Part shown: positions 6,778-20,400 of the stretch, piece after piece
Layout: each line of letters opens with the position of its first letter
Numbering within the stretch: position 1 is the stretch's first letter
Assembly (NCBI GenBank): GCA_030704615.1
Contig: CM060731.1
Location: 71,300,001 to 71,364,000, forward strand
Source: Takakia lepidozioides
Taxonomy: Eukaryota > Plantae > Bryophyta
Length of the DNA stretch: 64,000 nucleotides
Direction: 5' to 3'
Translations under genes and position numbers: made by a program
Notes under the pieces: model-generated
Databases searched by the model: none
Told to the model about the DNA's origin: nothing
The model's input: the letters and a program-made list of their open reading frames with translations, nothing else

Positions 6778-9338
6778 TCCACACGTGCCATTCAGCGGAT
6801 GAAACTCAAACGCATTCTGTTCATCATGTGAAATTCAGGTTCACATGACGTGAATTTCGCGGTAGGAACATTCATACGAAATTCACGGTATGAACTCTAA
6901 TTCCTGGGCCACAGTAATTCCTGGACCACTCTAGAATGAACAGGCCCGAATGAAACTGCTTTACATATCAGGCTAAATGTTGGTTGTCTATACAGACAAA
7001 TACTGCGGAGGGCACACTGTGCATAAAAGGGGCGAGGAAAAAACTAACCTTGCACAATGCGGCAGTGAAGGCTTACAAACTGAGTGGAACTAACCATAGC
7101 GGTGAAACAAAAGAAGAGCAAAATTACACCGAGGAAGATATCACACCCACAAAGCCGAGAAAGCAAGCCAAAAGCAAGACCACTCCTGAGAAAGCTTTCT
7201 AAGAGAATTTAATAAACGGATTTCATCCACCTACGTGCTTGAGTATCCGTCCCAAGATCATCCTTGAAGCGCACAAATAGGTGTCAACATTCTACAACCG
7301 TAGGTCATCGAAGCCCCCCAGTTATTAATATTGTCTTCAAGTCAGAGAACATGGAGTTAGGTAGAATCAAAATTTTCTAGATTACCTCACCTCTCTAATG
7401 TTCTCTCAAAAAATCCAGTAAGAACTAAAAACCTGCTGATGATATTTCGAGGGCACTAATTTTTCGATTCCACGTTGAACCACATACTGCCCCCGGGTCG
7501 AAGAGATCGAACATGACAAAATCCAGAGTTGCCTCCCGACCGGTCTTCAAATGTGAAAACACCTTGCCTGGTACTTTCCACTACTACTTATACATGGTTG
7601 CGAATTCCATGTTATGAATGAGCTCATTATCTCATCCATGAGGAGCAGCATCTGTTCACATCCATTCACTTTTCATCCCTAAGCACCCCGGTCACCGTCC
7701 ACCCGTAACCGGTGCGAGTCCATGGTTGACTCGTCGCTAAATCCAACCAGGTCAAGCCCAGCCATAGACCACCTACTAGTAGCATATACCTACACGACTA
7801 CCCGCTATCAATGTAGTACCCACACTTCTCAAACATGTGTCGGACTCGGGCCCATCCCTCTCTGACCAAATTCGGAACCCCCGCAAGATTTTATTACACA
7901 CCACAACATACCATAACTTACTCGAGATTCCCCTCCACCTGAATCTAGTGTTGCACCAAACCCTCCATGCGCATTGCGATCCCCTCTCCTCCAGTCGCAG
8001 TCAACGTGCACGAGAGAACCAGCGAGACTCTAGAGACATACTACTTACACACCAGCGGGAGTGAGAGCGAGAGAGAGAGAAGGGGGCAAGTGGGAGAGAC
8101 GGACCGGGTCCACGGCCGGCCAGTCTGGCCTCGGAGAGGGCGAAGCGGAGCGCCGCGCCGGCCCCGCGCGCGCACGGCCGCTGGGCCCCGCCGCGTTTGC
8201 AGCCGCCACGCCGCCCCTCGTGGGCCGCTGCGTCCTTCCGCGCAATCCTTCTCACTCTTTCCTTTCCACCGCGCTTTCAAGGGTGTGGAGGAGGAGCGTC
8301 GATTTTAGAATGTAAAGAAGCTTCAAGTGCGGGATAAGAAAGGCGATGTTGGTATGTATCCTTCTTACCAAGTTTCCGCAGGGTCCGAAAACTGAGAAAT
8401 TAGAAAAGTAGTTTGAACTTGAACGTCCCCGAGGGTCTGCAGTAAGTACTACTTAAAGTAAGTAGTAGCGATGATACCGACGGTGCGATAACCTCACGTC
8501 CGAGGAAAAAGTGCAGGGCGGTGAAGTTGGGGTTGTAGGTGGGGAGTGGGCGGCCGCGCACCCCGCGGGCGAGAGGGGGAGACCGCGATGCTGACACGGC
8601 GGGCGGGCACTGGCTTGCGGTTGCTGACCCGGGGTGACCGGGCGCCCGTGCTCCGGCACGGGCGCCCGGGTGACAGGCTACAGGAAGGGAGGGGGTGGGG
8701 GAGAGGCAGAGAGGCGTAGAGCTTGTTGTGCCCTACTTCCATGGCCGCGGGGCGAGCTGCTGGATCCACGTACTGCGGTTTGCTGTCGTCTGCAGTCGGG
8801 GGACCATGCTCGCTGCTTGTGCATCGTCCGGGGGCGCATTATCCAGCGGGGTGCTGTTGCTGCATGGGAGGAGAAGCTATGTCGCGGTGTACGGTGGGGT
8901 TGTCGCATTCTTTGACCAGCAGCAGCATCTTTTGGCTAGCCTCTGTTCCGTCTCTGGAGCTCGAGCGGGTGTTGCCTCTGTCGGCAGAGTTTAGGGTTTC
9001 TGGAGCATTGGTGGCGGTTCGGAAGGGCGGGATCGTTGGTGTTTGAAATTGTCGCTAGTATGCGAAGCAGAGAGACGTTCCGATAGAGGGACAGGAAAAT
9101 TGGAAGGTTGCTCGGGAGAGTAAAGCGTAAAGGGGTTTTTGCTGAAATGGGTTGAGATGCGGGCAACGGTAACTTTTTAAACGTGGAGGGAGAGGGAGAG
9201 GGAGAGGGGGATTGCTTCAGGATTAGCTGAATAGAGTGGCAATTGGAGACGAGGAAATTATAAGTGAATCTTTCGTTTATGAGGGGAGGAGGGAGAGACA
9301 GAAAAAGAGAGAGGGGGGGAGACAGGGTGAGAGAGGTA

Positions 9339-10736
9339 ATGGAGAATGGAAATGATGTTGTTTTAAGAACTGAGCGTGTTCCTGGGCCAAGAATTGATTT
9401 TGACACTGGTGGACCTAAAGAGTTTGAAATTAACCTAAAGATTGAGCGTGGAACTCTTGTAACGGCTGAGGGTGAGACCGTGACCACCATTGGGAGAGAG
9501 ACTGTTGTGTCGAGCGAGCTTGGAACTTCTGCCTTGGGTAAGCATGATACGGTGGGGAGCGCTGCAGTTATCGGTGATGATGGTGACGTGGACGAGACGG
9601 GTGAGCCTGAAAGTAGCAGGAGGGCTGATCGCGACTCTGCAGCTATGGATGGAGGGGATGTCATTCTGTTGATGGAGAAGCGCGATGCGATTCCCATGGC
9701 TAGGTGCGATCCCCTTCCGGCCGCTGAGCCCCGCGAGGCCGGTGCAATGGATGAGGAGCCTATGACCATGGATGAGGATGCTCCTACAACCCCAACAGGG
9801 GCGACCGGAGAACTGGATAGGAAGGATCGGTTGTACAAGAAAGGGCCCTGGAATGTATCAGAGATGTTAGTGCTGCAGTCAGCAAAGCGAGAAGATGTGG
9901 TTAGGGCAGGCAAAGGGGCCCCCAGGGACAAGCACAGGACGGCACAAGAGAAATGGCAATCTATTGAGGATTACTGCTGGGTACATTTTGTGCAACGCAG
10001 TGCCCAGCAATGCCAGGACAAGTGGGAATCCATGAGTGCAGAGTTCAAGAAGGTCAAGGACTATGAGTGCGGTATTCCAGCAGGACAAAAATCCTACTGG
10101 CAGATGACAATAGATGAAAGAAAGGCTTTCCGTGTGCCGCCAAATTTTCAGAAGGAGGTGTACCAAGCGCTCTGGGAGTGGTATGACAAAAACAGAGTGG
10201 TGGAACCCGGTAAGTTTGTACTTTTGCTCGGTCAATGGCAAACTAGTGCCATATCTCACAGGTAATAAATTTAAGTCAAACTTGTGAAATTTCTCTTACA
10301 AGAGAGGATGTAGATATTTTGGTGGTCTCCAGGATGTCTGCAATGGCATTTGTCATGGTGTTCTTTGCACCTCCTGCATTTCTAGAAGGAAGTTTGTTCT
10401 GAGGTGGTTTCTGTCAAATGACATCTTGGCTTTTGGACCTTGGAGAATAAGGAGGGATTTTGCTGCTGATCTCGAATCTTGTTCTTAGCTCCGGAAGGAG
10501 TAGTATTTCCACTAATGCAGTAGCTCTGACAGGTACTGTTGCGTTGAATAATATCACAAAAGTTGATGAGACCAAAGTGCAATCACCAATTGCCCTAGGA
10601 TCTTCTCCTTCTAGCGCAACTGCACCATCAAGAAAAAGGCCGATTGAGCGCAGTGTAACTCGTGTACCTCGGAAGATTATCAAGAGTGAAGGCATCTCTG
10701 GGGCAGGTCATATCGACCCTCGAACATTGTCGCAAG
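9339..10736 (+). CDS. Trihelix (GT/Myb-SANT-like, ASR3/SH4-like) transcription factor, exons 9339-10209 and 10533-10736; probably continues into the downstream hydrolase exons
   Basis: Trihelix DBD GPWNVSEMLVLQSAK...KWQSIEDYCW...RSAQQCQDKWESMSAEFKKVKDYE...SYWQMTIDERK..VPPNF. Perfect GTAAGT donor at 10210 and a phase-1 acceptor at 10532 after a CTAAT branch-like site. Basic NLS-like SRKRP in exon 2. An alternative start ATG lies at 9279. Confidence 0.88.
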
Positions 10737-11230
10737 GTGATCACTCTTCATCCATCTTATTTGGCAGTTTTTCAGTTTGCACCATCCTACTTTCAATTAG
10801 GTCGAGTGCATCTGCTATGCAACCGGAACTTGTGTGTGGAGTGTTTAGGTGCCAATGATCATGACCTAGACCGGTTTTGAATGGCAAACAGTACATGTAC
10901 GGAAGCTCAGCTGTCTAAATCCTCCAACAGGTCTATTAGTGCAGTGCGGCATTGTATCTGTGTGAGTGTTTTGACGGTTCTTAAAAACTTGGGTATTTGA
11001 TGGCATGGCTGTTTGGACAGTGTATCGAACTCTGAGAGAAGCAAACTGATTAGGGGTATTTATGAAGTTTTTTCTCTTTTCTCAGTCTGAGGTTTTGCCA
11101 TGTGATCTGCTTGGAAGCAGTAGTAAGAGATGGATTCCTAGGCTTTCAATTGCGGTTGGTGTGGCTGACCTTCAGATGAAGGCATTGCTAAGGATGGGGT
11201 TGGGGCATTTGAATACATGGTCCAAGACAG

Positions 11231-13666
11231 GTGAGAGAGAAGCTTATGAGGTCTTCGATTTGGGAGACTTTGTTCTGAAAGAAGGTGCAACATTAAGGGG
11301 GGCCAAATTGGCGTACAAGACATGGGGTATATTGAACGAGGAGCGTAGCAATGTGATTGTATATCCATCGTGGTACTCAGGAAGGCATTGGGAGAATGAT
11401 TGGCTCATTGGCCCTGGAATGGGCCTGGACCCCTGCAAATACTTCATCATTGTCCCTAATGTACTGGGCAACGGCCTCTCAACCTCCCCTAGCAATTGTC
11501 CGGCACCTTACAACAAGGCCCGATTTCCCAAGGTCTTTACACCTTTTCCCCACTTTACAGGCATTAGTGTCTCTGCTGGCTAATTGACAATTAGACCTGC
11601 AAGCATTCACCAACTCCGTACAAGATTGCCCAAGTGATGTGTAGATTATACAGGAATTTGATTGATTCTTCGGGAGCTGCGAATTTTATAAGAAGTGAGC
11701 ATGATTTGGTTTGTTGTTCTCCTCGTGATGTTCCTGGACTAACCTGTCGAGTTCGTTGGCAATATAAGATTGCTGCTGGGTTGTCTGCAGTAGGAACCTG
11801 CACATTCAGCTCAACGCAGTCATCAGCTCTTTGGTATAGGGTTGATTACCATGCATTTTCTAAGTAATAACTAACTACTGCTGCTTGTTTTGTTGGGAAT
11901 CCGGGTAATAGGGAGTTTTTCTTAGCTAAGTGTCTTGAGATAAGCTGGTGACTCTGTCATGTGCACAGCAGACAGTGATACAGACCAGCTCTTTACTGAG
12001 CCTGGCCAATGGATGCAGGTGCGGGTGGAGGACAATGTGCAAGCCCAGTTTAAACTGTTGACGGAGAAGTTTGGGGTCCGCCGGTTGAAGCTGGTGATTG
12101 GATGGTCCATGGGTGCAGGCCAGGCCTTTCAATGGGCTGCCAGCTTCCCAGATATGGTTGAGCGTATTCTCCCATTCTGTGGTTCAGCCCGCACCAGCCC
12201 TCACAGCATTGTGAGTCTCTCACGCTTCTAAAAGTTAACAATCTGTAGTCAAGAAGGGTGATCATTACCTAAATATTAGTCAGAATGGTTGATTGTGACT
12301 GTCTATGTTATGACAAGGGTTGTCATGTCATGTTGGAGTGTCATCAAGTGGCCCACTAGCCTTATTCACACATTACTCCAAGGAAAATGTAGATGTTTCT
12401 TACTGGAAGGTGTATCTGTATTGAAACCGATCTACATAATTCTCAAGGCTTTTACAGAAGATGGAATGAGATTGTGAGATGCACTGGATTAGTGTCAGTA
12501 AATTTTGCGGCCCTGTATACTGGAGAGAAAAATTTGCTACAGTAATTTCAAGGCAAGATGCACTGGTACATGCATGTGTGCCAACCCTCGACAGTGCTGT
12601 TGCAGGTCTTCCTGGAAGGGGTGAAGGGAGCATTGATGGCTGACAGTTCGTTTCAAGATGGTTGGTATGATAAGATTCCTTCCAAAGGCCTGAGGGCAGC
12701 TGCCCGTGTTTATGCAGGCTGGGGCTTCTCACAATCATTCTACTGGAATGAGGTTGAACCACTTTGTTTCCCTCACACCCATCGATTGCCTCTTTACTTG
12801 TGGGGGCAGTGGGGTTAATCACTGGGTATCCTCTCTATTCTGGATCGTCCATTCTCTTCAAGCATCAGGTTTAGGTTTACTCATGAGCAGTAATGCTACT
12901 TCAAACAGTGGAGCAATACATAAATCTTGAGTAAGATACAGGCAGAAGGGCACACTCAGACACTGCATTTTCTGATAGGGGTTTTGTTTGAAGCCCTCAT
13001 TACAGTGGGGTATTAGGGACTATTTGCCAGCATGGTGAGAGTGTCAGAAAAAAGTATTGATCACTTGAGACTGGATGGAATTTTCCAAGAATAAGTTGAG
13101 CTATCATGCAGGGTCATTGTTGCACTGCAAGGTCGAAACATGGTAAGTGAAGGATTGGTGTATAAGAGTATAAGGCTTGGTGCTCTAATATCAGTGATAC
13201 CCAGGGAGATAAGGTGCTTTATGTGGTTCATCTCCTTCATTCCATCTTTCAGTTTCCTAAAGCATGTGTGGGTGTGGTGTTGGATCAGGTGTGGCGAGAA
13301 ATGGGTTACTCGAGTCTGGAGGACTTCCTGGTCGGTTTTTGGGAGGGTTTTTTCTTAGACCGCAGAGACCCCAACAACCTGCTGACCATGCTATGGACGT
13401 GGCAAAACGGCAATATTGGGTTGACTGCTGGGTGTGACGGAAGTTTGGAGAAGGCACTGGCATCCATACGTGCCAAGGCGATTGTGATGCCGGCGGAGCA
13501 GGATCTTTACTTCCCAGTCTCCGATGAAGAATATGAAGTGAAGTTTATGCCCAATGCAGAACTCCGGGTAATTCCGGGTGTGTGGGGTCATTTCGCAGGG
13601 GCAGGTCTCAACCCTGTTGACACCAAGTTCATTGACAATGCCGTGCGGGACTTGTTGGCCATGTAA
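11231..13666 (+). CDS. Homoserine O-acetyltransferase-like (MetX fold; MekB/CgHle-type esterase-like) alpha/beta-hydrolase, exons 11231-11532, 12019-12210, 12606-12752, 13289-13666
   Basis: YEVFDLGDFVL...AKLAYKTWG.LN..SNVIVYPSWYSG; PNVLGNGLSTSPSN; nucleophile GWSMG; acid EQDLYF; base WGHFAG. Three phase-0 GT-AG introns give an uninterrupted frame. Confidence 0.9.
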
Positions 13667-16600
13667 TTTACTCATACCGGTGGTTTCAGTGTAAAAATTT
13701 GAGATATTAGTTGAGTTTTCTTTTCTCAAATCCAAGTAAGGGAAGGCCTTTGGATAGTGAACAGGGGCATGTTTACAAGTACTGTGCAGCAAACTCATCA
13801 TCTGGTTCTATACCTCAAGGGTTTGGTGACCACGCGTAGTTCTCCGCCAGTACCAAGGACTTAGCATAGGTTGAAAATCAACTTAATGCAGCCTTGGGTG
13901 GCCTATATAGTTGCTAATTAGAATTCCACACAGTTCTTGGTGTTTCGATAGTCATGATCATTGCATCTCAGCAAGCACCTAGCCAAAAGAGGGTGGGTCA
14001 CAATATAGCAGTTGGCTCTAAGGCACTGGAACAATAAAACCCATGCCCAATGAATTGGCAAGTCCACTGCGCTTTCTGTCGAGTTCAGTTTGCATTTCTG
14101 ATTCAGCAGGGTTTGTTTTGTGTATAGTATTTAGGTTACTTGTGCTTTTGAATGCTTTGACCGCATGACGAATCACTGATACAATCTTAGTTGACTCCGG
14201 CTCTTGGAATTTCTGTTGGTAGGAAAAATTTGCCTGGGTCTGGAGGCTTAGTGTTAAGATAAAGGCTACCCAAGTTTGGGAGAGAGATGCCTGCTCTGCT
14301 TATTGCTTGCTATCTGGAGCTGGAGATGATCCTTATTGAAGGAGAAGAAAACAAGAGTTTCTTCTACTTGTATTTGTTCAGATCCTGTCTCTTAGTATGG
14401 GACACTTTTGCAGGTACTAGATCTGAACAGCCACTCTATATTTAGGATCTAGGTTTACTTGTATGGAAGTCAGATTGAGTTGCTTTTTCTCTCTTCGCCG
14501 CCCCAGACTCTGCATTAGAAAATGACTTGTGTAGTTAAATTTATCTGTCCGTGTCAATGCAAAAATAATTACATTATCTGTTTTTGGTGCGCTGGAAGTT
14601 GGAACGCACAATGGAAAGCAGAATATGTTCGACAGAGGACCAGTTTCAGCCTATGTCATATCCCTTAGCTTTCCAGGGCAACTATCATTCAATCAGGGCA
14701 TAGCTCGATATATTTTAATTTTCCGTGTAGATTCTGATGCCTACATGGGGAGCTTTGGACATACATACACACATACCTACATAATTTTTGTAACTTGGGT
14801 ACACAAAACCAATCAAAACTTGGTTCATAATCTGAGTTTAACCCCTAAACCTTTTCCAATTTTTGGGATTTTTTCAAGAAAAAAATCTGGATTTTCTGGA
14901 TTTTGTATTTCGGGATGGCATTGGTTGGGACCCCAAAAGTTGATCCCCACATTCCCCTTGTTCCAACAAGCCCGAGATGACCAAAATTGGAGCCCATTAT
15001 AGGAGCCGACACGTGGTCAAAGAGGGGGTCAAAGAGGGGTATGGAATGCTCATTGAAAGGCTATGCACATTTATTGCGGAACTCTTCAGCTAGTCCTCTC
15101 TCTCTCTCTCCTTTTCACCCACACATATACATGAAACATGAAATGCATGAGGGGTTTTGAACCCACTATACACTCCTTTTGGCAGCCCATACATGCACGC
15201 ATCCAAGGGGAGAGCTAATCTTCCCCCTTGTCTACACCCCCGCTTGGATAAGGGACCACACTAATTCTAACCACTACAACCACCACTACATGTTTTAGTG
15301 TAGCTAAAGTGTTGAATCCTGCCCACCATGCAGATTCTGAACTACTTTTCAATTCAAACACATATTGCTGCTCGGAACTCTCTACCAAATGGAGTAAACT
15401 ACATACAAGTGGAAAAATGGTTGTCATTTTGTCATGTGCTTAAGTTTCCATCTGATAGACCACAGTAAACAACTCAAGCATATTAGCCAACAAACGTACA
15501 ATTTATCAACATGATAGAGCTTAATATGGTGGAGGAGCAAGTGGTTATGGTGGGGTTTGGTAAGAAGACACTACGAGTGTGTCATGAGAGGATCTCAGAG
15601 GTCTCTCCCTTCATCCTCAAGCCAGCAACATGCATATGCGTCATGTTGGGTTTATGGAGGAACCCATCTTAAGAAGGATTGCCCAGAGAAGACAAAGGGT
15701 TGGCACAGGCACAGCCTACATAATTGCAGTGTGGGCATTCATGTGGCAAGTAGGCCATGGAGAGGTGGAGGTCGTAACCAAAACCAAGGAGTACAAGATC
15801 AGGGTCAAGATCATCATCAGGTAGCGTTTGAGCGCTTAAGAGCATACGGACTGAAACTGCAACCTTTAAAGTGCAAGTTCAAATCCACGATCAGATGAAG
15901 TATCTGGGCCACATGATATACCCTGGAGGATTGAGTGTTCAACAGACAAAGGTGGAGGCCATTACATGCATTCCACATGGATGTAAGCAGAGTTCGTGCT
16001 TTCATGGGATTGGCAAACTACTATCGACGGTTTGTTAAGGGATTTAGCAGCATAGCCAAGGCTCTTACCAAGTTGACCAAGCTGGGTCAGGAGTGGCAGT
16101 GGGAGGAGGAGTAAGAGCAAGTCTTTGAGACTAAAGGCTCGATTGATTTCTACGCCTATTATGAGGCGACCTATCAGGAGGCAGCCTTTCCAGCTACATA
16201 CGGATTGGAGTAATGCTGGGGATTGAGGCAGTGTTAACGCAGGTGGATGATGAGGGAAGAAAGTTCATGGTGGCATATGTTAGCTGCTCGAACAATGATG
16301 CTGAGGCTAAATATAGCTCGTATGAGAGAGTGTGTCTAGCTGCCGTATGGGGTAGATGCAGGCTAAGGTGGACCAAAAACTTCGTTACCAACATAGTTTT
16401 CAGTGACTGTCGTGCATGATATCATGAATTGCTTTGCATAAAATAAATAATGCTAAAAAAAAAATTTTCATGTTGGATTCATAACTTCAATATCTACCTA
16501 TATCGATTGTCCAATTGTCAATCCAATCAAATGTTGAAGAGTTGACTTTTGAACACAACAACTGTAGCATAAATATGATATAGGAGCTCGTTAGCATGGT

Positions 16601-16668
16601 GAAACAAATGAGGAGATGGTGCCAGGATGGCTGCATGCATCTGCCTTTCTGTGCATTCTAGCAATGGG

Positions 16669-17427
16669 TGTTAAGGACGAGGGCATGACTGAACATAAAC
16701 AGGATATCAGACTTAGAGGTACAAGACTAGACAAGAAGTCAAGGTCGAAAGGCCGAATGCATGATGGATAAAGAAGAATCAAGATAATCTTTATAACAAT
16801 GGACAAGAGTACAAGATACTGGAACTCGACTTGAATATTGGAATGCTGGAAACTGGACTGGAGTACCAGATACTGGAAACTGGACTAGAGTACTGGAAGT
16901 TGAACTGGAGTACCGGAACTGGAAACAAGAGTAGCTTGAACTTATGTTGGCGAGACTGAAGAGTGTCCAGTCTCGCCTCCTATATATACTGGCTACTAGG
17001 AAGTTTCCTAAGAAGCTTATCCAGCCAAGGGAAGTCTCTTGAGAAGCTTCCTCGACCAAGGGAAGTCTCTTGAGAAGTTTCCCCTGCCAAGGGAAGTCTC
17101 CTGAGAAGCTTCCTCACCCAAATGAAGTCTCCTGATAAGCAATTCCTCGATCAATGGAAGTCTCTTGAGAAGCTTCTCCTGCCAAGGGAAGTCTCCTGAA
17201 AAGCTTCCTCCACCAAGAAGCTTCATGAGCAGTTTCTTGAGTTACTCTCAGTAATTTGGTAGTTACTTTTGGTAATTTGGTAACTCATTGTAACTTATGG
17301 TAACTTATGATAAATCATAGTAAATCATGATAAATCACGGTAACTTTTGATAACTTGGTAATTTCCGATAATTTGGTAATTTTTGGTAATTACTCTTGGT
17401 GAATTTTTCTGGGCTATGTCCGTGACA
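16669..17427 (-). repeat. 3' LTR of the chromovirus; contains ~30-bp tandem repeats (GGAAGTCTCTTGAGAAGCTT...) and GTAACTT-type short repeats
   Basis: Follows the PPT and begins TGTCA on the minus strand. It matches 21728-21900 in direct orientation and 20509-20988 in inverted orientation. Confidence 0.9.
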
Positions 17428-20400
17428 TCACCTCCTCCTGTAGCGTCGAGTTCCTCGAGGAGCGGTAAAATCTAGGACTTGCCTAGAGTTGGAGAAAATC
17501 CAAAATTCGGTGAATGGTACTTGCCAAGTATTCGGCTCTTCGTTCTTGACTCAAATGATTAATAGGTCATTGCAACCATCGATAGTGTCCAACACCTTGA
17601 ACTTGGGACCACGTAGTGATTTGAGCATTCTGATCTTCGAAGTTGTCTTCAAACATGATTTCATTGCCCGCTAGGTTCGAAACCTCAACCTCCAACATAA
17701 TTATCAGACTTCGAGTAGGCTTCACTTGCCGTCGTACGGTGTCCAAACGAGGAAGTACGCGTCGCATTGGTGGTCCATCGTCTCGATGGCGTCGGCGTGA
17801 TGTTGAAGGTTGTAAGAGTCGGAACGGCTGGTCTGGTAGTTGGGTAAGCGACAGTTCCAATGTATCCGATTTTTGTGACTACATGCTGCCAATATAAAAT
17901 GCAATAGTGCTTGAAGTGTAGCTATATATACTGCTGTATGGTGCTCCCCCCTCCTTAACGTGTATCATGTACACTGAATGTGGAGTTTTCACCTTGAAGC
18001 TAACTTGACTGACATCATCATTGTGACGACTTATTGACGTGTGGCTCGAGGCTTACCTGGATATCGTTGATGAAACTCTTGGACTTTGTCAGGTACATTG
18101 AAGATTGGATGACGGTTCTCACGTGCGTTCGCTAATGTCGTAGCCTTTCCAATGTACGAAATATTCAAGACGTCCGTACATGATACAAGAGTCTAGGACT
18201 TCGTCGACTTCATACTCGATTTCATGATTGACTTCAATTGGTGGAGGTGGTACAAGAACTTTCCCATGGATACTTTAGTGATGATACAACTTTAATAATG
18301 AGACGTGAAAGACTGGGTGGATGCGCATACTTCGTGGGAGTTCAAGCCAAAAACTGACCGGATTAATTTGACGAATAATGTTGAATGGTCCCAAGCGTTG
18401 ATAATCCAACTTCCTTGATGGTCACATGGTTTGGATGTTCCGTCGAATGAGCCATACACGATCTCCGATCTTGAACTTGGGTTGAATTTGTCGATGTTGA
18501 TCTGCATACTCCTTGTATTGTTTTTGAGCTTCTACTAGTTAGAATGTAAGCTCCTTGTGAATCGTAGCAAGATGAGTAGCAACATTTTCTGCAGCAGGGC
18601 TTCCGACAGTTTTCATGTGGAGAGGGTCGGCTCGAGGGTGATGACCATAATTGAAGAAAAATGGAGTTTGCTTCGTCGATGAATGTGTAGTGTTGTTGTA
18701 GGCAAACTCAGCCAAGGGCAAAAGGTCCGTCCAATTATCCCGTTGATAATTTATCGTACAGCGAAGATATTGCTCCAAAATCTGATTTACGCGCTCGGTT
18801 TGACCATCAGTCTGCAGATGTTCGGTTGTCGAGAAATTGATCTTGGTGTTCAGTATTTGAAATAATCCTCTTTAGAATTTTGATATGAATTGTGGTCCTC
18901 GATCAGATACGATGTCATCCGAGAGCCCATGAATGTAGTAAATATTGTTGAGAAAGAGTTTTGCCGTCTCTTCACCTGTAACCGTCTTATTACATTGAAT
19001 GAAATGTGTCATCTTCGTGAAACGATCTCCAATCACAAAGATTGAATCATGGATGTTCGAAATTGGAAGGTCTATAATAAAGTTCATTGATAAGGACGAC
19101 CATGGACACTTAGGAATGGATAAGGCTTGAAGAAGACCCCCGTGAGGTCGATGTCGTGGTCCCTTCGCACACATGTCGCAAGATTTTATAAATTCTTTCA
19201 TTAGTTTCCACATTTGTGGCCACCAATAGTCTCTGGAAATCAATTCCATTGCTTTATTGAAACCAAAATGTGGGTTACGATTTTTTGTAGTGACTTTGTT
19301 GAGCCCACGATAGTCCACACACATGCGTAACGATCCGTCTTTCTTCTTCACAAATAAGATAGGTGCTATCGCGGGTGATTTCGAATATCGAATGAAATTC
19401 TTTGACAAATTTTCATCAATGTATTCGCGTAAAGCAGCCAACTCCGTCTGAGATACATTGTAGATTGGGTCAAATGGTGGCTGGGCTCCTTCTTGCAACT
19501 CAATGGCACAATCATAAGGTCGATGTTCTGGTAATATGTCTGCATTTTTCTTCTCGAAGACATCCTTGAAATCTTGATATTGAGTGGATAATGTCGAAGT
19601 ACCTTGGTTTATTGTGGTCTTGATCGGAGTCGCATAAAGTGCAAATATCGCGTCCTTCTTTGTAGCTCTCATTAAGGCTCTAGCTCCAAGAAACAGGGGT
19701 TGGATACCCTTGGTACTTTTGCATTTTTGTCTTGCCGAAATTTTTCGCCATCGCCAGTCGATGTCAGGATTATGAAGTACAAACCAAAGAAGTCCAAGGA
19801 TCACATGATTCATTGGAGACTGGATGACGTTGAAAACAATCTGTGATGCTTCATCTTTAAGCTGCACTTCAAGGGGTCGAGTTTCATGGTCAACGTTTCC
19901 CGATGCTAACGGTCGTCCATCGATGACTTCAACAAGGGCCGAGAATTTCTTTTTTACGAGCGTTAAATTATGTTGTTTCGCAAAGTCTTTGTCAATAAAA
20001 CACGCTGAAGCGCCCAAGTCCAAAAGTGCTTCTACGGAGATATCTCGATTCTGTATTCTGATCTTTACTGGAACTGTGAAACAAGGTGCAAGGTCTGGAG
20101 GTAGAAAAAGACCTTTTTTAGATGAAGAATTGGTAGTGTCCAGCCGCATGGTCCCTACTGTGACTGGACATCTTCATTTTCCGACCTCCTCGTATCGCAC
20201 ATTGGAATTGCGCCCCGAGCTTTGAATCTTCTCTTGTTGAGGCAATTAAATGCTATGTGATCTTCTTCTCCGCAATAGAAACATAATTCATTTAAGCGCC
20301 GTCGTTTATTTTTTTGTTGTGTCTGGCTTGAATCGGACAGCATCAATCTGCGTATGATCACTACAGGATGTCGGATAGATCGTTGTGTTTGGTGCCGTAG

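What the first reader, a model, noticed from the sequence alone, without database searches (positions are those of the whole stretch)
9339..13666. Probable trihelix transcription factor fused to a microbial-type MetX/MekB-like alpha/beta-hydrolase: candidate small-molecule-sensing TF
Seen: trihelix exon 2 ends at a phase-1 donor (CAAG|GT, 10736/10737). A phase-1 acceptor (GACAG|GT, 11230/11231) lies only five codons before the hydrolase homology begins (GEREA-YEVFDLGDF). Joining 9339-10209, 10533-10736, 11231-11532, 12019-12210, 12606-12752 and 13289-13666 gives 2094 nt, a 697-aa open frame with trihelix DBD, S/P/basic linker and a hydrolase with an intact Ser-Asp-His triad (GWSMG/QDLY/GHFAG). 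Only ~500 bp separate the two parts, and I find no C-terminal coiled-coil exon for the trihelix part. Known: trihelix factors normally end in a coiled-coil, and alpha/beta-hydrolases act as plant ligand receptors (GID1, D14/KAI2). Inference: a one-component sensor/enzyme-TF. A competing acceptor at 11175 would give a TF-only isoform ending DEGIAKDGVGAFEYMVQDR*, so alternative splicing could switch the hydrolase on or off.
Basis: partly seen in the sequence, partly recalled or inferred. Interest (0 to 1): 0.85.

Follow-up and report, generated by a model that had tools for sequence, protein, structure and literature searches.

The report
Moss trihelix factor fused to esterase
Mosses and liverworts have a real, spliced gene that joins a DNA-binding transcription-factor domain to an esterase-like domain of bacterial type; that domain has lost its catalytic residues at least four times yet stays highly conserved, which suggests it now binds a small molecule or partner protein and so controls the transcription factor.

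Summary
Confirmed and extended. The six-exon model is an open 697-aa frame. Spliced contigs from two independent studies carry all five introns, including 10736→11231. The fusion is annotated, though uncharacterised, in Physcomitrium, Ceratodon, four Sphagnum species, two Marchantia and two Riccia; Selaginella, Coccomyxa and actinobacteria have the stand-alone enzyme. The domain belongs to PRK07581, is structurally nearest acetyl esterase MekB, and is not true MetX.

Three new points. (1) Intron 2 is ancestral in the hydrolase gene, so the fusion seam is intron 1; the TF-only 11176 isoform is neither seen nor conserved. (2) Liverworts have the same exons 2-6 behind a different trihelix clade (AU p=5e-7), so the DNA-binding exon was swapped or captured twice. 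(3) The triad is intact here and in the stand-alone enzymes, but lost at least four times among fusions (Ser→Ala, His→Gln, His→Asn), while dN/dS stays about 0.03-0.11.

Best reading: a nuclear trihelix factor whose esterase fold is kept as a non-catalytic binding/dimerisation module. Ligand sensing is inferred, not shown. I found no paper describing it, and the scan's earlier notes on this genome held no report of it.

The parts
8721..9338 (+). 5' leader (at least 618 nt) with eight upstream ATGs, one of them (9279) in frame with the main ORF
   Evidence: X2 contig starts at 8721; ATG list
9339..10209 (+). Exon 1: start codon, acidic disordered N-terminus, trihelix DNA-binding domain with extra fourth helix (about 9837-10190); ends phase 1
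   Evidence: Pfam PF13837; GT-1 structure hit; MENG start shared with P. patens and L002; AlphaFold model of the ortholog
10210..10532 (+). Intron 1 (323 nt, phase 1): the inferred fusion/exon-swap seam
   Evidence: Spliced in both runs; same phase and position in Marchantia, where exon 1 encodes a different trihelix clade
10533..10736 (+). Exon 2: Ser/Pro linker, basic RKR motif (10631-10648, candidate nuclear localisation signal), and DPRTLSQ start of the hydrolase (10715-10735)
   Evidence: Homologous to liverwort exon 2 (shuffle z 5-11) but not to stand-alone N-termini; alignment A2
10737..11230 (+). Intron 2 (494 nt, phase 1), ancestral in the hydrolase gene; contains the unused candidate acceptor at 11175/11176
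   Evidence: Spliced in both runs; same position in mosses, Marchantia and Selaginella
11231..11532 (+). Exon 3: hydrolase N-part including the oxyanion-side loop YPSWYSG
   Evidence: PRK07581 5-102; PDB 5d6o and 5e4y hits
12019..12210 (+). Exon 4: nucleophile elbow GWSMG, Ser489 at 12106-12108
12606..12752 (+). Exon 5: part of the helical cap/lid region
   Evidence: PRK07581 167-215; secondary structure of the ortholog
13289..13666 (+). Exon 6: Asp644 (13502-13504), His673 (13589-13591), stop codon
13667..14076 (+). 3' untranslated region (minimum extent)
   Evidence: Contigs end at 14050 and 14076

Best explanation
A single gene shared by mosses and liverworts encodes a trihelix transcription factor whose usual C-terminal coiled coil is replaced by a complete MekB-like (PRK07581) alpha/beta-hydrolase domain. 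In the fusion, catalysis is dispensable and the fold is kept as a regulatory module. Shown: one spliced transcript, conserved architecture, purifying selection on both domains, repeated loss of catalytic residues. Inferred mechanism: the basic linker takes the protein to the nucleus; the trihelix binds promoter DNA; the hydrolase domain holds a small metabolite in its pocket (probably a short ester or its acid, given MekB-type relatives) and/or dimerises the protein in place of the lost coiled coil; occupancy changes dimer state or partner binding and so transcription. This is like GID1 or D14/KAI2 in using a hydrolase fold as a receptor, but in one polypeptide. The window's species keeps the ancestral triad and may still turn over the ligand.
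For: Junction-spanning contigs in two studies. Same six-exon layout in at least five other moss lineages and in Marchantia; annotated fusions in P. patens XP_024383860, Ceratodon, four Sphagnum, two Marchantia, two Riccia. Triad motifs read intact in 107 of 108 non-plant homologs (His motif not parsed in the last) and in all green stand-alones, but Ser>Ala in Ceratodon, L017-L019/L022 and Marchantia, His>Gln in all Sphagnum, His>Asn in L002/L021: 3 Ser changes and 2 His changes on a tree with those sites masked, at least 4 independent. Hydrolase dN/dS 0.03-0.11, including within triad-broken pairs (0.089 for L002/L021; 0.093-0.112 in Sphagnum); DBD dN/dS 0.04-0.10. Departures from invariant residues cluster in the catalytic loops: 11 of 22 against 22 of 126 elsewhere, Fisher p=0.002. 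Both domains fold confidently, joined by a disordered linker.
Against: No ligand, localisation, DNA-binding or activity data. AlphaFold pTM is only 0.59 and the linker is disordered, so no direct DBD-hydrolase contact is shown. The triad is intact in the window, P. patens and Riccia. The catalytic-loop windows for the Fisher test were chosen after I had seen the departures, and lineages are not independent. The bacterial gene neighbourhood gave no substrate clue. Loss of catalysis fits a pure scaffold as well as a sensor.
Confidence: 0.6

Rival explanations
1. Ligand-free scaffold: the hydrolase fold only dimerises the factor or recruits a co-regulator (a pseudoenzyme interaction domain); no small molecule is sensed. 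This is the narrower form of the best explanation without its ligand step.
For: The coiled coil is absent and something must replace it. Triad lost repeatedly. From my own knowledge, MetX-family proteins are commonly dimers via the cap domain. The related At3g10030 trihelix was found as a MORC1 interactor (PMC11471927).
Against: 115 of 148 residues invariant in the enzymes stay invariant in all fusions, and identity is 84-94% between moss lineages, higher than a plain dimer module would seem to need. I could not map these residues to pocket versus surface.
Confidence: 0.22
2. Active enzyme-TF: the trihelix tethers a working esterase/deacetylase to chromatin, or the protein is simply a bifunctional enzyme; triad-broken copies are lineage-specific decay.
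For: Intact S489/D644/H673 in the window, P. patens and Riccia; the window copy has a short branch (0.05). No stand-alone moss or liverwort copy appeared among the top hits, so the fusion could supply the ancestral activity.
Against: At least four independent triad losses with dN/dS near 0.1 afterwards. P. patens also departs at the elbow and oxyanion loop (GWSIG, PTWFLG).
Confidence: 0.13
3. The trihelix exon is a passenger or targeting device (nuclear import, stability, or a captured promoter), and the protein does not regulate transcription by sequence-specific DNA binding.
For: Two unrelated trihelix clades sit in front of the same exons 2-6 in mosses and liverworts, which suggests that DNA specificity is interchangeable.
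Against: The DBD is under strong purifying selection (dN/dS 0.04-0.10) and is almost invariant between Marchantia and Riccia; conserved Trp residues are intact.
Confidence: 0.04
4. Two adjacent genes with read-through or a mis-join, or a TF-only/hydrolase splice switch at 11176.
For: In-frame ATGs lie upstream of exon 3 in this species; the acceptor at 11231 is purine-rich; an AG exists at 11174-11175.
Against: Junction contigs in two studies, with no branch contig; no in-frame ATG in L001/L003/L005; the -55 AG is not conserved; annotated fusions in ten species.
Confidence: 0.01

Closest known systems
Trihelix-enzyme chimeras: trihelix-UMP-kinase-like family (PF13837+PF00696; At3g10030 by my own knowledge) and metallo-beta-lactamase-trihelix At5g63420
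   Same: A trihelix domain fused to a metabolic-enzyme fold. The liverwort form's DBD is nearest the trihelix-UMP-kinase family. At5g63420 and a kinase chimera Os4g33300 are noted in PMC4195496; At3g10030 is a SIP1-clade gene with a leaf phenotype (PMC4783932).
   Different: The partner here is an alpha/beta-hydrolase, not mentioned in the family surveys I read. The moss DBD is from another clade. The same enzyme part occurs behind two different DBDs, and its catalytic residues were lost repeatedly.
Acetyl esterase MekB (PDB 5e4y/5efz) and C. glutamicum acetylester hydrolase (5d6o); NCBIfam PRK07581
   Same: 38% identity, TM 0.93-0.96 by target, rmsd 1.2-1.7 A; orthologs score 507-519 bits against a PRK07581 cut-off of 332. 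MekB is a broad-specificity esterase for short esters (PMC2975365).
   Different: Those are free bacterial enzymes. The substrate of the plant/actinobacterial PRK07581 subgroup is not established here, and many fused copies lack a triad residue.
Plant alpha/beta-hydrolase receptors GID1, D14, KAI2 (own knowledge)
   Same: A hydrolase fold used for signalling; GID1 likewise lost the catalytic His.
   Different: A different hydrolase family (none among the sequence hits or the 50 listed structural hits). They are separate proteins acting through F-box proteins and repressors; here the fold is fused to the DNA-binding domain.
TF-only bryophyte trihelix proteins such as MpTRIHELIX25
   Same: The moss DBD is 55-59% identical and sister to the MpTRIHELIX25 group (support 94/89).
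   Different: They end in a charged helical tail. MpTRIHELIX25 is intronless, with no hydrolase gene within 10 kb.

Membership tests
Trihelix transcription factors | Myb/SANT-like trihelix domain (PF13837) above cut-off | tested here: met
   42.2 bits against cut-off 27; GT-1 structure hit
Trihelix transcription factors | C-terminal coiled-coil helix (usual, not universal) | tested here: not met
   No tail homology in 10210-20000; the transcript continues into the hydrolase
Trihelix transcription factors | Sequence-specific DNA binding and nuclear localisation | not testable with these tools
   Only a conserved RKR motif and purifying selection
Trihelix SH4 clade | Phylogenetic placement with SH4/Arabidopsis reference members; extended fourth helix | tested here: inconclusive
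   Extra helices after the trihelix in the model; no named SH4 reference was in my tree, so the clade name rests on recalled motifs
PRK07581 (NF005757) MekB-like hydrolases | Whole-profile match above the curated cut-off | tested here: met
   Four exons tile positions 5-338 of 339, bits summing to about 477; full-length orthologs score 507-519 against 332
PRK07581 (NF005757) MekB-like hydrolases | Ser-Asp-His triad | tested here: met
   Intact in the window protein; not met in Sphagnum, Ceratodon, Marchantia and two other moss lineages
PRK07581 (NF005757) MekB-like hydrolases | Acetyl-esterase activity | not testable with these tools
   No assay
Homoserine O-acetyltransferase MetX | TIGR01392/NF001209 score above cut-off | tested here: not met
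   Orthologs 135-146 bits against 500, and 133-143 against 331
GID1/D14/KAI2 receptors | Sequence or structural membership of those families | tested here: not met
   Absent from PDB sequence hits and from the 50 listed Foldseek hits
One-component ligand-sensing transcription factor (works-like claim) | Sensor fold and DNA-binding domain in one polypeptide | tested here: met
   Spliced single ORF
One-component ligand-sensing transcription factor (works-like claim) | Ligand binding changes DNA binding or transcription | not testable with these tools
   Indirect only: triad loss under purifying selection

The most novel reading that the evidence does not exclude
A bryophyte one-component receptor: a bacterial-type esterase turned into a small-molecule sensor wired directly to a trihelix DNA-binding domain. 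It was rewired to a different DNA-binding exon in mosses versus liverworts and senses an unidentified metabolite or signal.
Probability: 0.35. Interest if true: 0.9.

Novelty: new variant of a known kind. Interest (0 to 1): 0.74.

Why it matters
By my own knowledge, plant hydrolase-fold receptors (GID1, D14, KAI2) are separate proteins, and ligand-binding transcription factors are rare in plants. This gene exists in the two genetically tractable bryophytes (P. patens XP_024383860; M. polymorpha Mapoly0159s0028, whose promoter part is already listed in the collection of bioRxiv 10.1101/2023.06.17.545419), so the idea can be tested at once. It also offers a natural series from active enzyme to pseudoenzyme (at least four independent triad losses), and a clear case of one module placed behind two different DNA-binding exons at a phase-1 intron. 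Automatic names such as 'homoserine O-acetyltransferase' for the Marchantia protein are wrong by NCBIfam cut-offs.

Tried and rejected
Searches were exon by exon, or used natural database orthologs (P0192, P0232, P0360); the joined model was used only inside local scripts for the frame check, alignments and trees. Rejected: separate hydrolase gene (junction contigs; no conserved ATG); 11176 splice switch (not seen, not conserved); true MetX (below cut-offs); GID1/D14/KAI2 membership; tandem origin next to MpTRIHELIX25 (no hydrolase gene within 10 kb); exon 2 derived from the UMP-kinase linker, a TF-only tail or a stand-alone N-terminus (shuffle z at most 2.3). Led nowhere: bacterial neighbourhood of P0034; ESM Atlas (only generic hydrolase clusters at 0.81); conservation of uORFs, introns and flanks (none); ten literature searches (no paper on this fusion; most subscription journals are not covered, and the MekB structure paper was not held). 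The first DBD tree had six mis-cut rows and was redone with the same result. The 52-row hydrolase tree is a quick tree, and its 'bact' rows are unlabelled non-plant hits, mostly bacterial by name. Single versus double origin of the fusion is unresolved by the hydrolase tree (AU p=0.45). The length filter (at least 363 aa) may hide short SIP1-type relatives. Hornworts, leafy liverworts and ferns could not be scored, and the organisms of stand-alones P0233/P0234 are unknown.
Full report
OBSERVATION. Exon 1 carries Pfam Myb_DNA-bind_4 above cut-off. Exons 3-6 tile the NCBIfam PRK07581 profile end to end. The triad is S489, D644, H673. Two public runs from two studies were laid on 8700-14600. Both skip exactly the five introns, including 10737-11230. 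One 3096-nt contig runs through all six exons from 8721 to 14050; in the other study a 1408-nt contig bridges exons 1-3. The runs are only guessed to be RNA, but the empty introns and exact GT..AG skips are what spliced RNA gives. No contig uses the competing acceptor at 11176; contigs can miss rare isoforms. The seven coding differences between contigs and window are five silent and two in the disordered N-terminus.

DISTRIBUTION. The nearest DBD relatives (79-90%) are moss proteins. The annotated Sphagnum magellanicum and S. fallax proteins already contain the same LSQ|GEREA junction. Genomic loci from other mosses show the same exons, phases and junction intron, and three of them have no in-frame Met that could start a separate hydrolase. 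Searching with the S. fallax protein found PF13837+PF00561 fusions in Physcomitrium patens (XP_024383860, 686 aa), Ceratodon, Sphagnum troendelagicum and S. jensenii, Marchantia polymorpha and M. paleacea, Riccia fluitans and R. sorocarpa. It found stand-alone hydrolases in Selaginella, Coccomyxa, two unidentified plant transcriptomes and many bacteria, named ones being actinobacterial, at about 60-73%. The green sequences form one group (97% SH-aLRT) among the bacterial ones, which fits an old gain from bacteria but does not date it. The window's species is a moss on its own deep branch, neither Sphagnum nor Bryopsida.

WHERE THE SEAM IS. The motif DPRxMxQ|xERE straddles intron 2 and is the natural N-terminus of the green stand-alone enzyme (Coccomyxa begins MDPRTMSQSERE). 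Selaginella's stand-alone gene has a phase-1 intron at the same place, after a 27-aa N-terminal exon. So intron 2 is ancestral, exon 2 occupies the place of the enzyme's old first exon, and the fusion seam is intron 1. The -55 AG proposed as a switch is not conserved.

TWO DIFFERENT DNA-BINDING EXONS. The Marchantia gene has the same six-exon layout and phases. Its exon 2 is homologous to the moss exon 2 even without the DPR motif (shuffle z 5.1-11.1 for the window), sharing G.SP...RKR.IER; stand-alone N-termini, TF-only tails and UMP-kinase linkers are not. Its exon 1, however, encodes a trihelix domain whose nearest relatives are the trihelix-UMP-kinase fusions of vascular plants, while the moss domain is sister to TF-only proteins such as MpTRIHELIX25. 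Holding the two fused DBDs together is rejected (AU p=4.9e-7), and the regions before the DBD are unrelated (z 0.1-0.7). Either one fusion in the moss-liverwort ancestor was followed by replacement of exon 1 in one lineage, which I favour because of the shared basic linker, or two trihelix exons were captured independently. The hydrolase tree does not decide this (p=0.45).

CATALYSIS IS DISPENSABLE, THE FOLD IS NOT. Triad motifs read intact in 107 of 108 non-plant homologs (the His motif was not parsed in the last) and in all green stand-alones. Among fusions the nucleophile is Ala in Ceratodon, in the L017-L019/L022 moss and in both Marchantia; the His is Gln in every Sphagnum and Asn in L002/L021. 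With those sites masked, the tree needs 3 Ser changes and 2 His changes; joining the two moss Ser-to-Ala rows is borderline (p=0.053), so there are at least four independent losses. Yet the domain is 84-94% identical between moss lineages, with dN/dS 0.03-0.11, also within triad-broken pairs (dS is near saturation for distant pairs). Of 148 residues invariant in the enzymes, 115 stay invariant in all fusions. Departures cluster at the oxyanion loop, nucleophile elbow, acid loop and His (11/22 against 22/126, p=0.002, windows chosen after seeing the data). Sphagnum annotations even include in-frame isoforms that skip exon 4 and so the nucleophile. The DBD is equally constrained (dN/dS 0.04-0.10).

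STRUCTURE AND FAMILY. An AlphaFold model of the P. patens ortholog shows a disordered N-terminus, a folded trihelix with extra helices, a disordered linker, and a hydrolase with pLDDT above 90; pTM 0.59 gives no support for fixed domain packing. The nearest solved structures are acetyl esterase MekB and the C. glutamicum acetylester hydrolase (38% identity, rmsd 1.2-1.7 A), then DAC acetyltransferase and MetX at 21-26%. Orthologs pass PRK07581 (507-519 against 332) and fail MetX (135-146 against 500). MekB hydrolyses short esters (PMC2975365). No coiled-coil tail is encoded downstream.

MECHANISM. Shown: one spliced, conserved, constrained fusion protein with dispensable catalysis. Inferred: nuclear import by the RKR linker; DNA binding by the trihelix; and a hydrolase fold that binds a small ligand and/or dimerises the factor in place of the coiled coil (0.6 overall; true ligand sensing about 0.35). 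Rivals: ligand-free scaffold (0.22), active enzyme-TF (0.13), passenger DBD (0.04), artefact or splice switch (0.01).

NOVELTY. Trihelix-enzyme chimeras are known (metallo-beta-lactamase At5g63420 and a kinase chimera, PMC4195496; At3g10030, PMC4783932). The proteins sit in databases as hypothetical or misnamed, and the Marchantia promoter is listed in a TF collection. Ten searches found no paper describing a trihelix-hydrolase fusion, within a library that lacks most subscription journals. The scan's earlier notes on this genome held nothing on it. I class it as a new variant of a known kind, interest 0.74.

Noticed in passing
window 8721-9338: A long 5' leader with several upstream ORFs (8741-9046, 101 aa; 8806-8994, 62 aa; short ones at 9060, 9147, 9157) and an in-frame ATG at 9279 that would add 20 aa. 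No conservation in ortholog loci by tblastx/blastn.
   Followed up: partly
window 11224-11230; L001, L002, L017, L021 at the same acceptor: A second AG four bases before the intron-2 acceptor (AAG|ACAG) is kept in five moss loci but not in Sphagnum or Marchantia; using it would shift the frame and stop after DR.
   Followed up: partly
window 12802-13316 (run X1) and 12864-13018 (run X2): Contigs lie inside intron 5: intron retention, pre-mRNA or DNA carry-over.
   Followed up: no
Sphagnum CY35_20G000500 / BDL97_20G007700 (P0007, P0188, P0189, P0192): Annotated isoforms skip exon 4 in frame (no nucleophile) or stop after exon 3. The gene is on the small chromosome 20, which I recall as the Sphagnum sex chromosome (not tested).
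   Followed up: partly
L005:8585-8927: One Sphagnum copy has a 32-nt deletion with frameshift in exon 6 (pseudogene allele or assembly error).
   Followed up: partly
P0062, P0088: The same hydrolase family is fused to a histidine-phosphatase domain (PF00300) in two other proteins of unknown origin, so the enzyme has entered other fusions.
   Followed up: partly
P0384-P0500: The trihelix-UMP-kinase-like fusion is widespread in vascular plants, but no moss or liverwort name is among the 120 listed hits. Whether liverworts lost it when its DBD moved to the hydrolase is untested.
   Followed up: no
L007:124-237 (P0233): The stand-alone plant hydrolase transcript has an upstream in-frame Met that adds a transit-peptide-like N-terminus missed by the gene call; P0234 and Selaginella also have N-terminal extensions, so the ancestral enzyme may be organellar.
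   Followed up: partly
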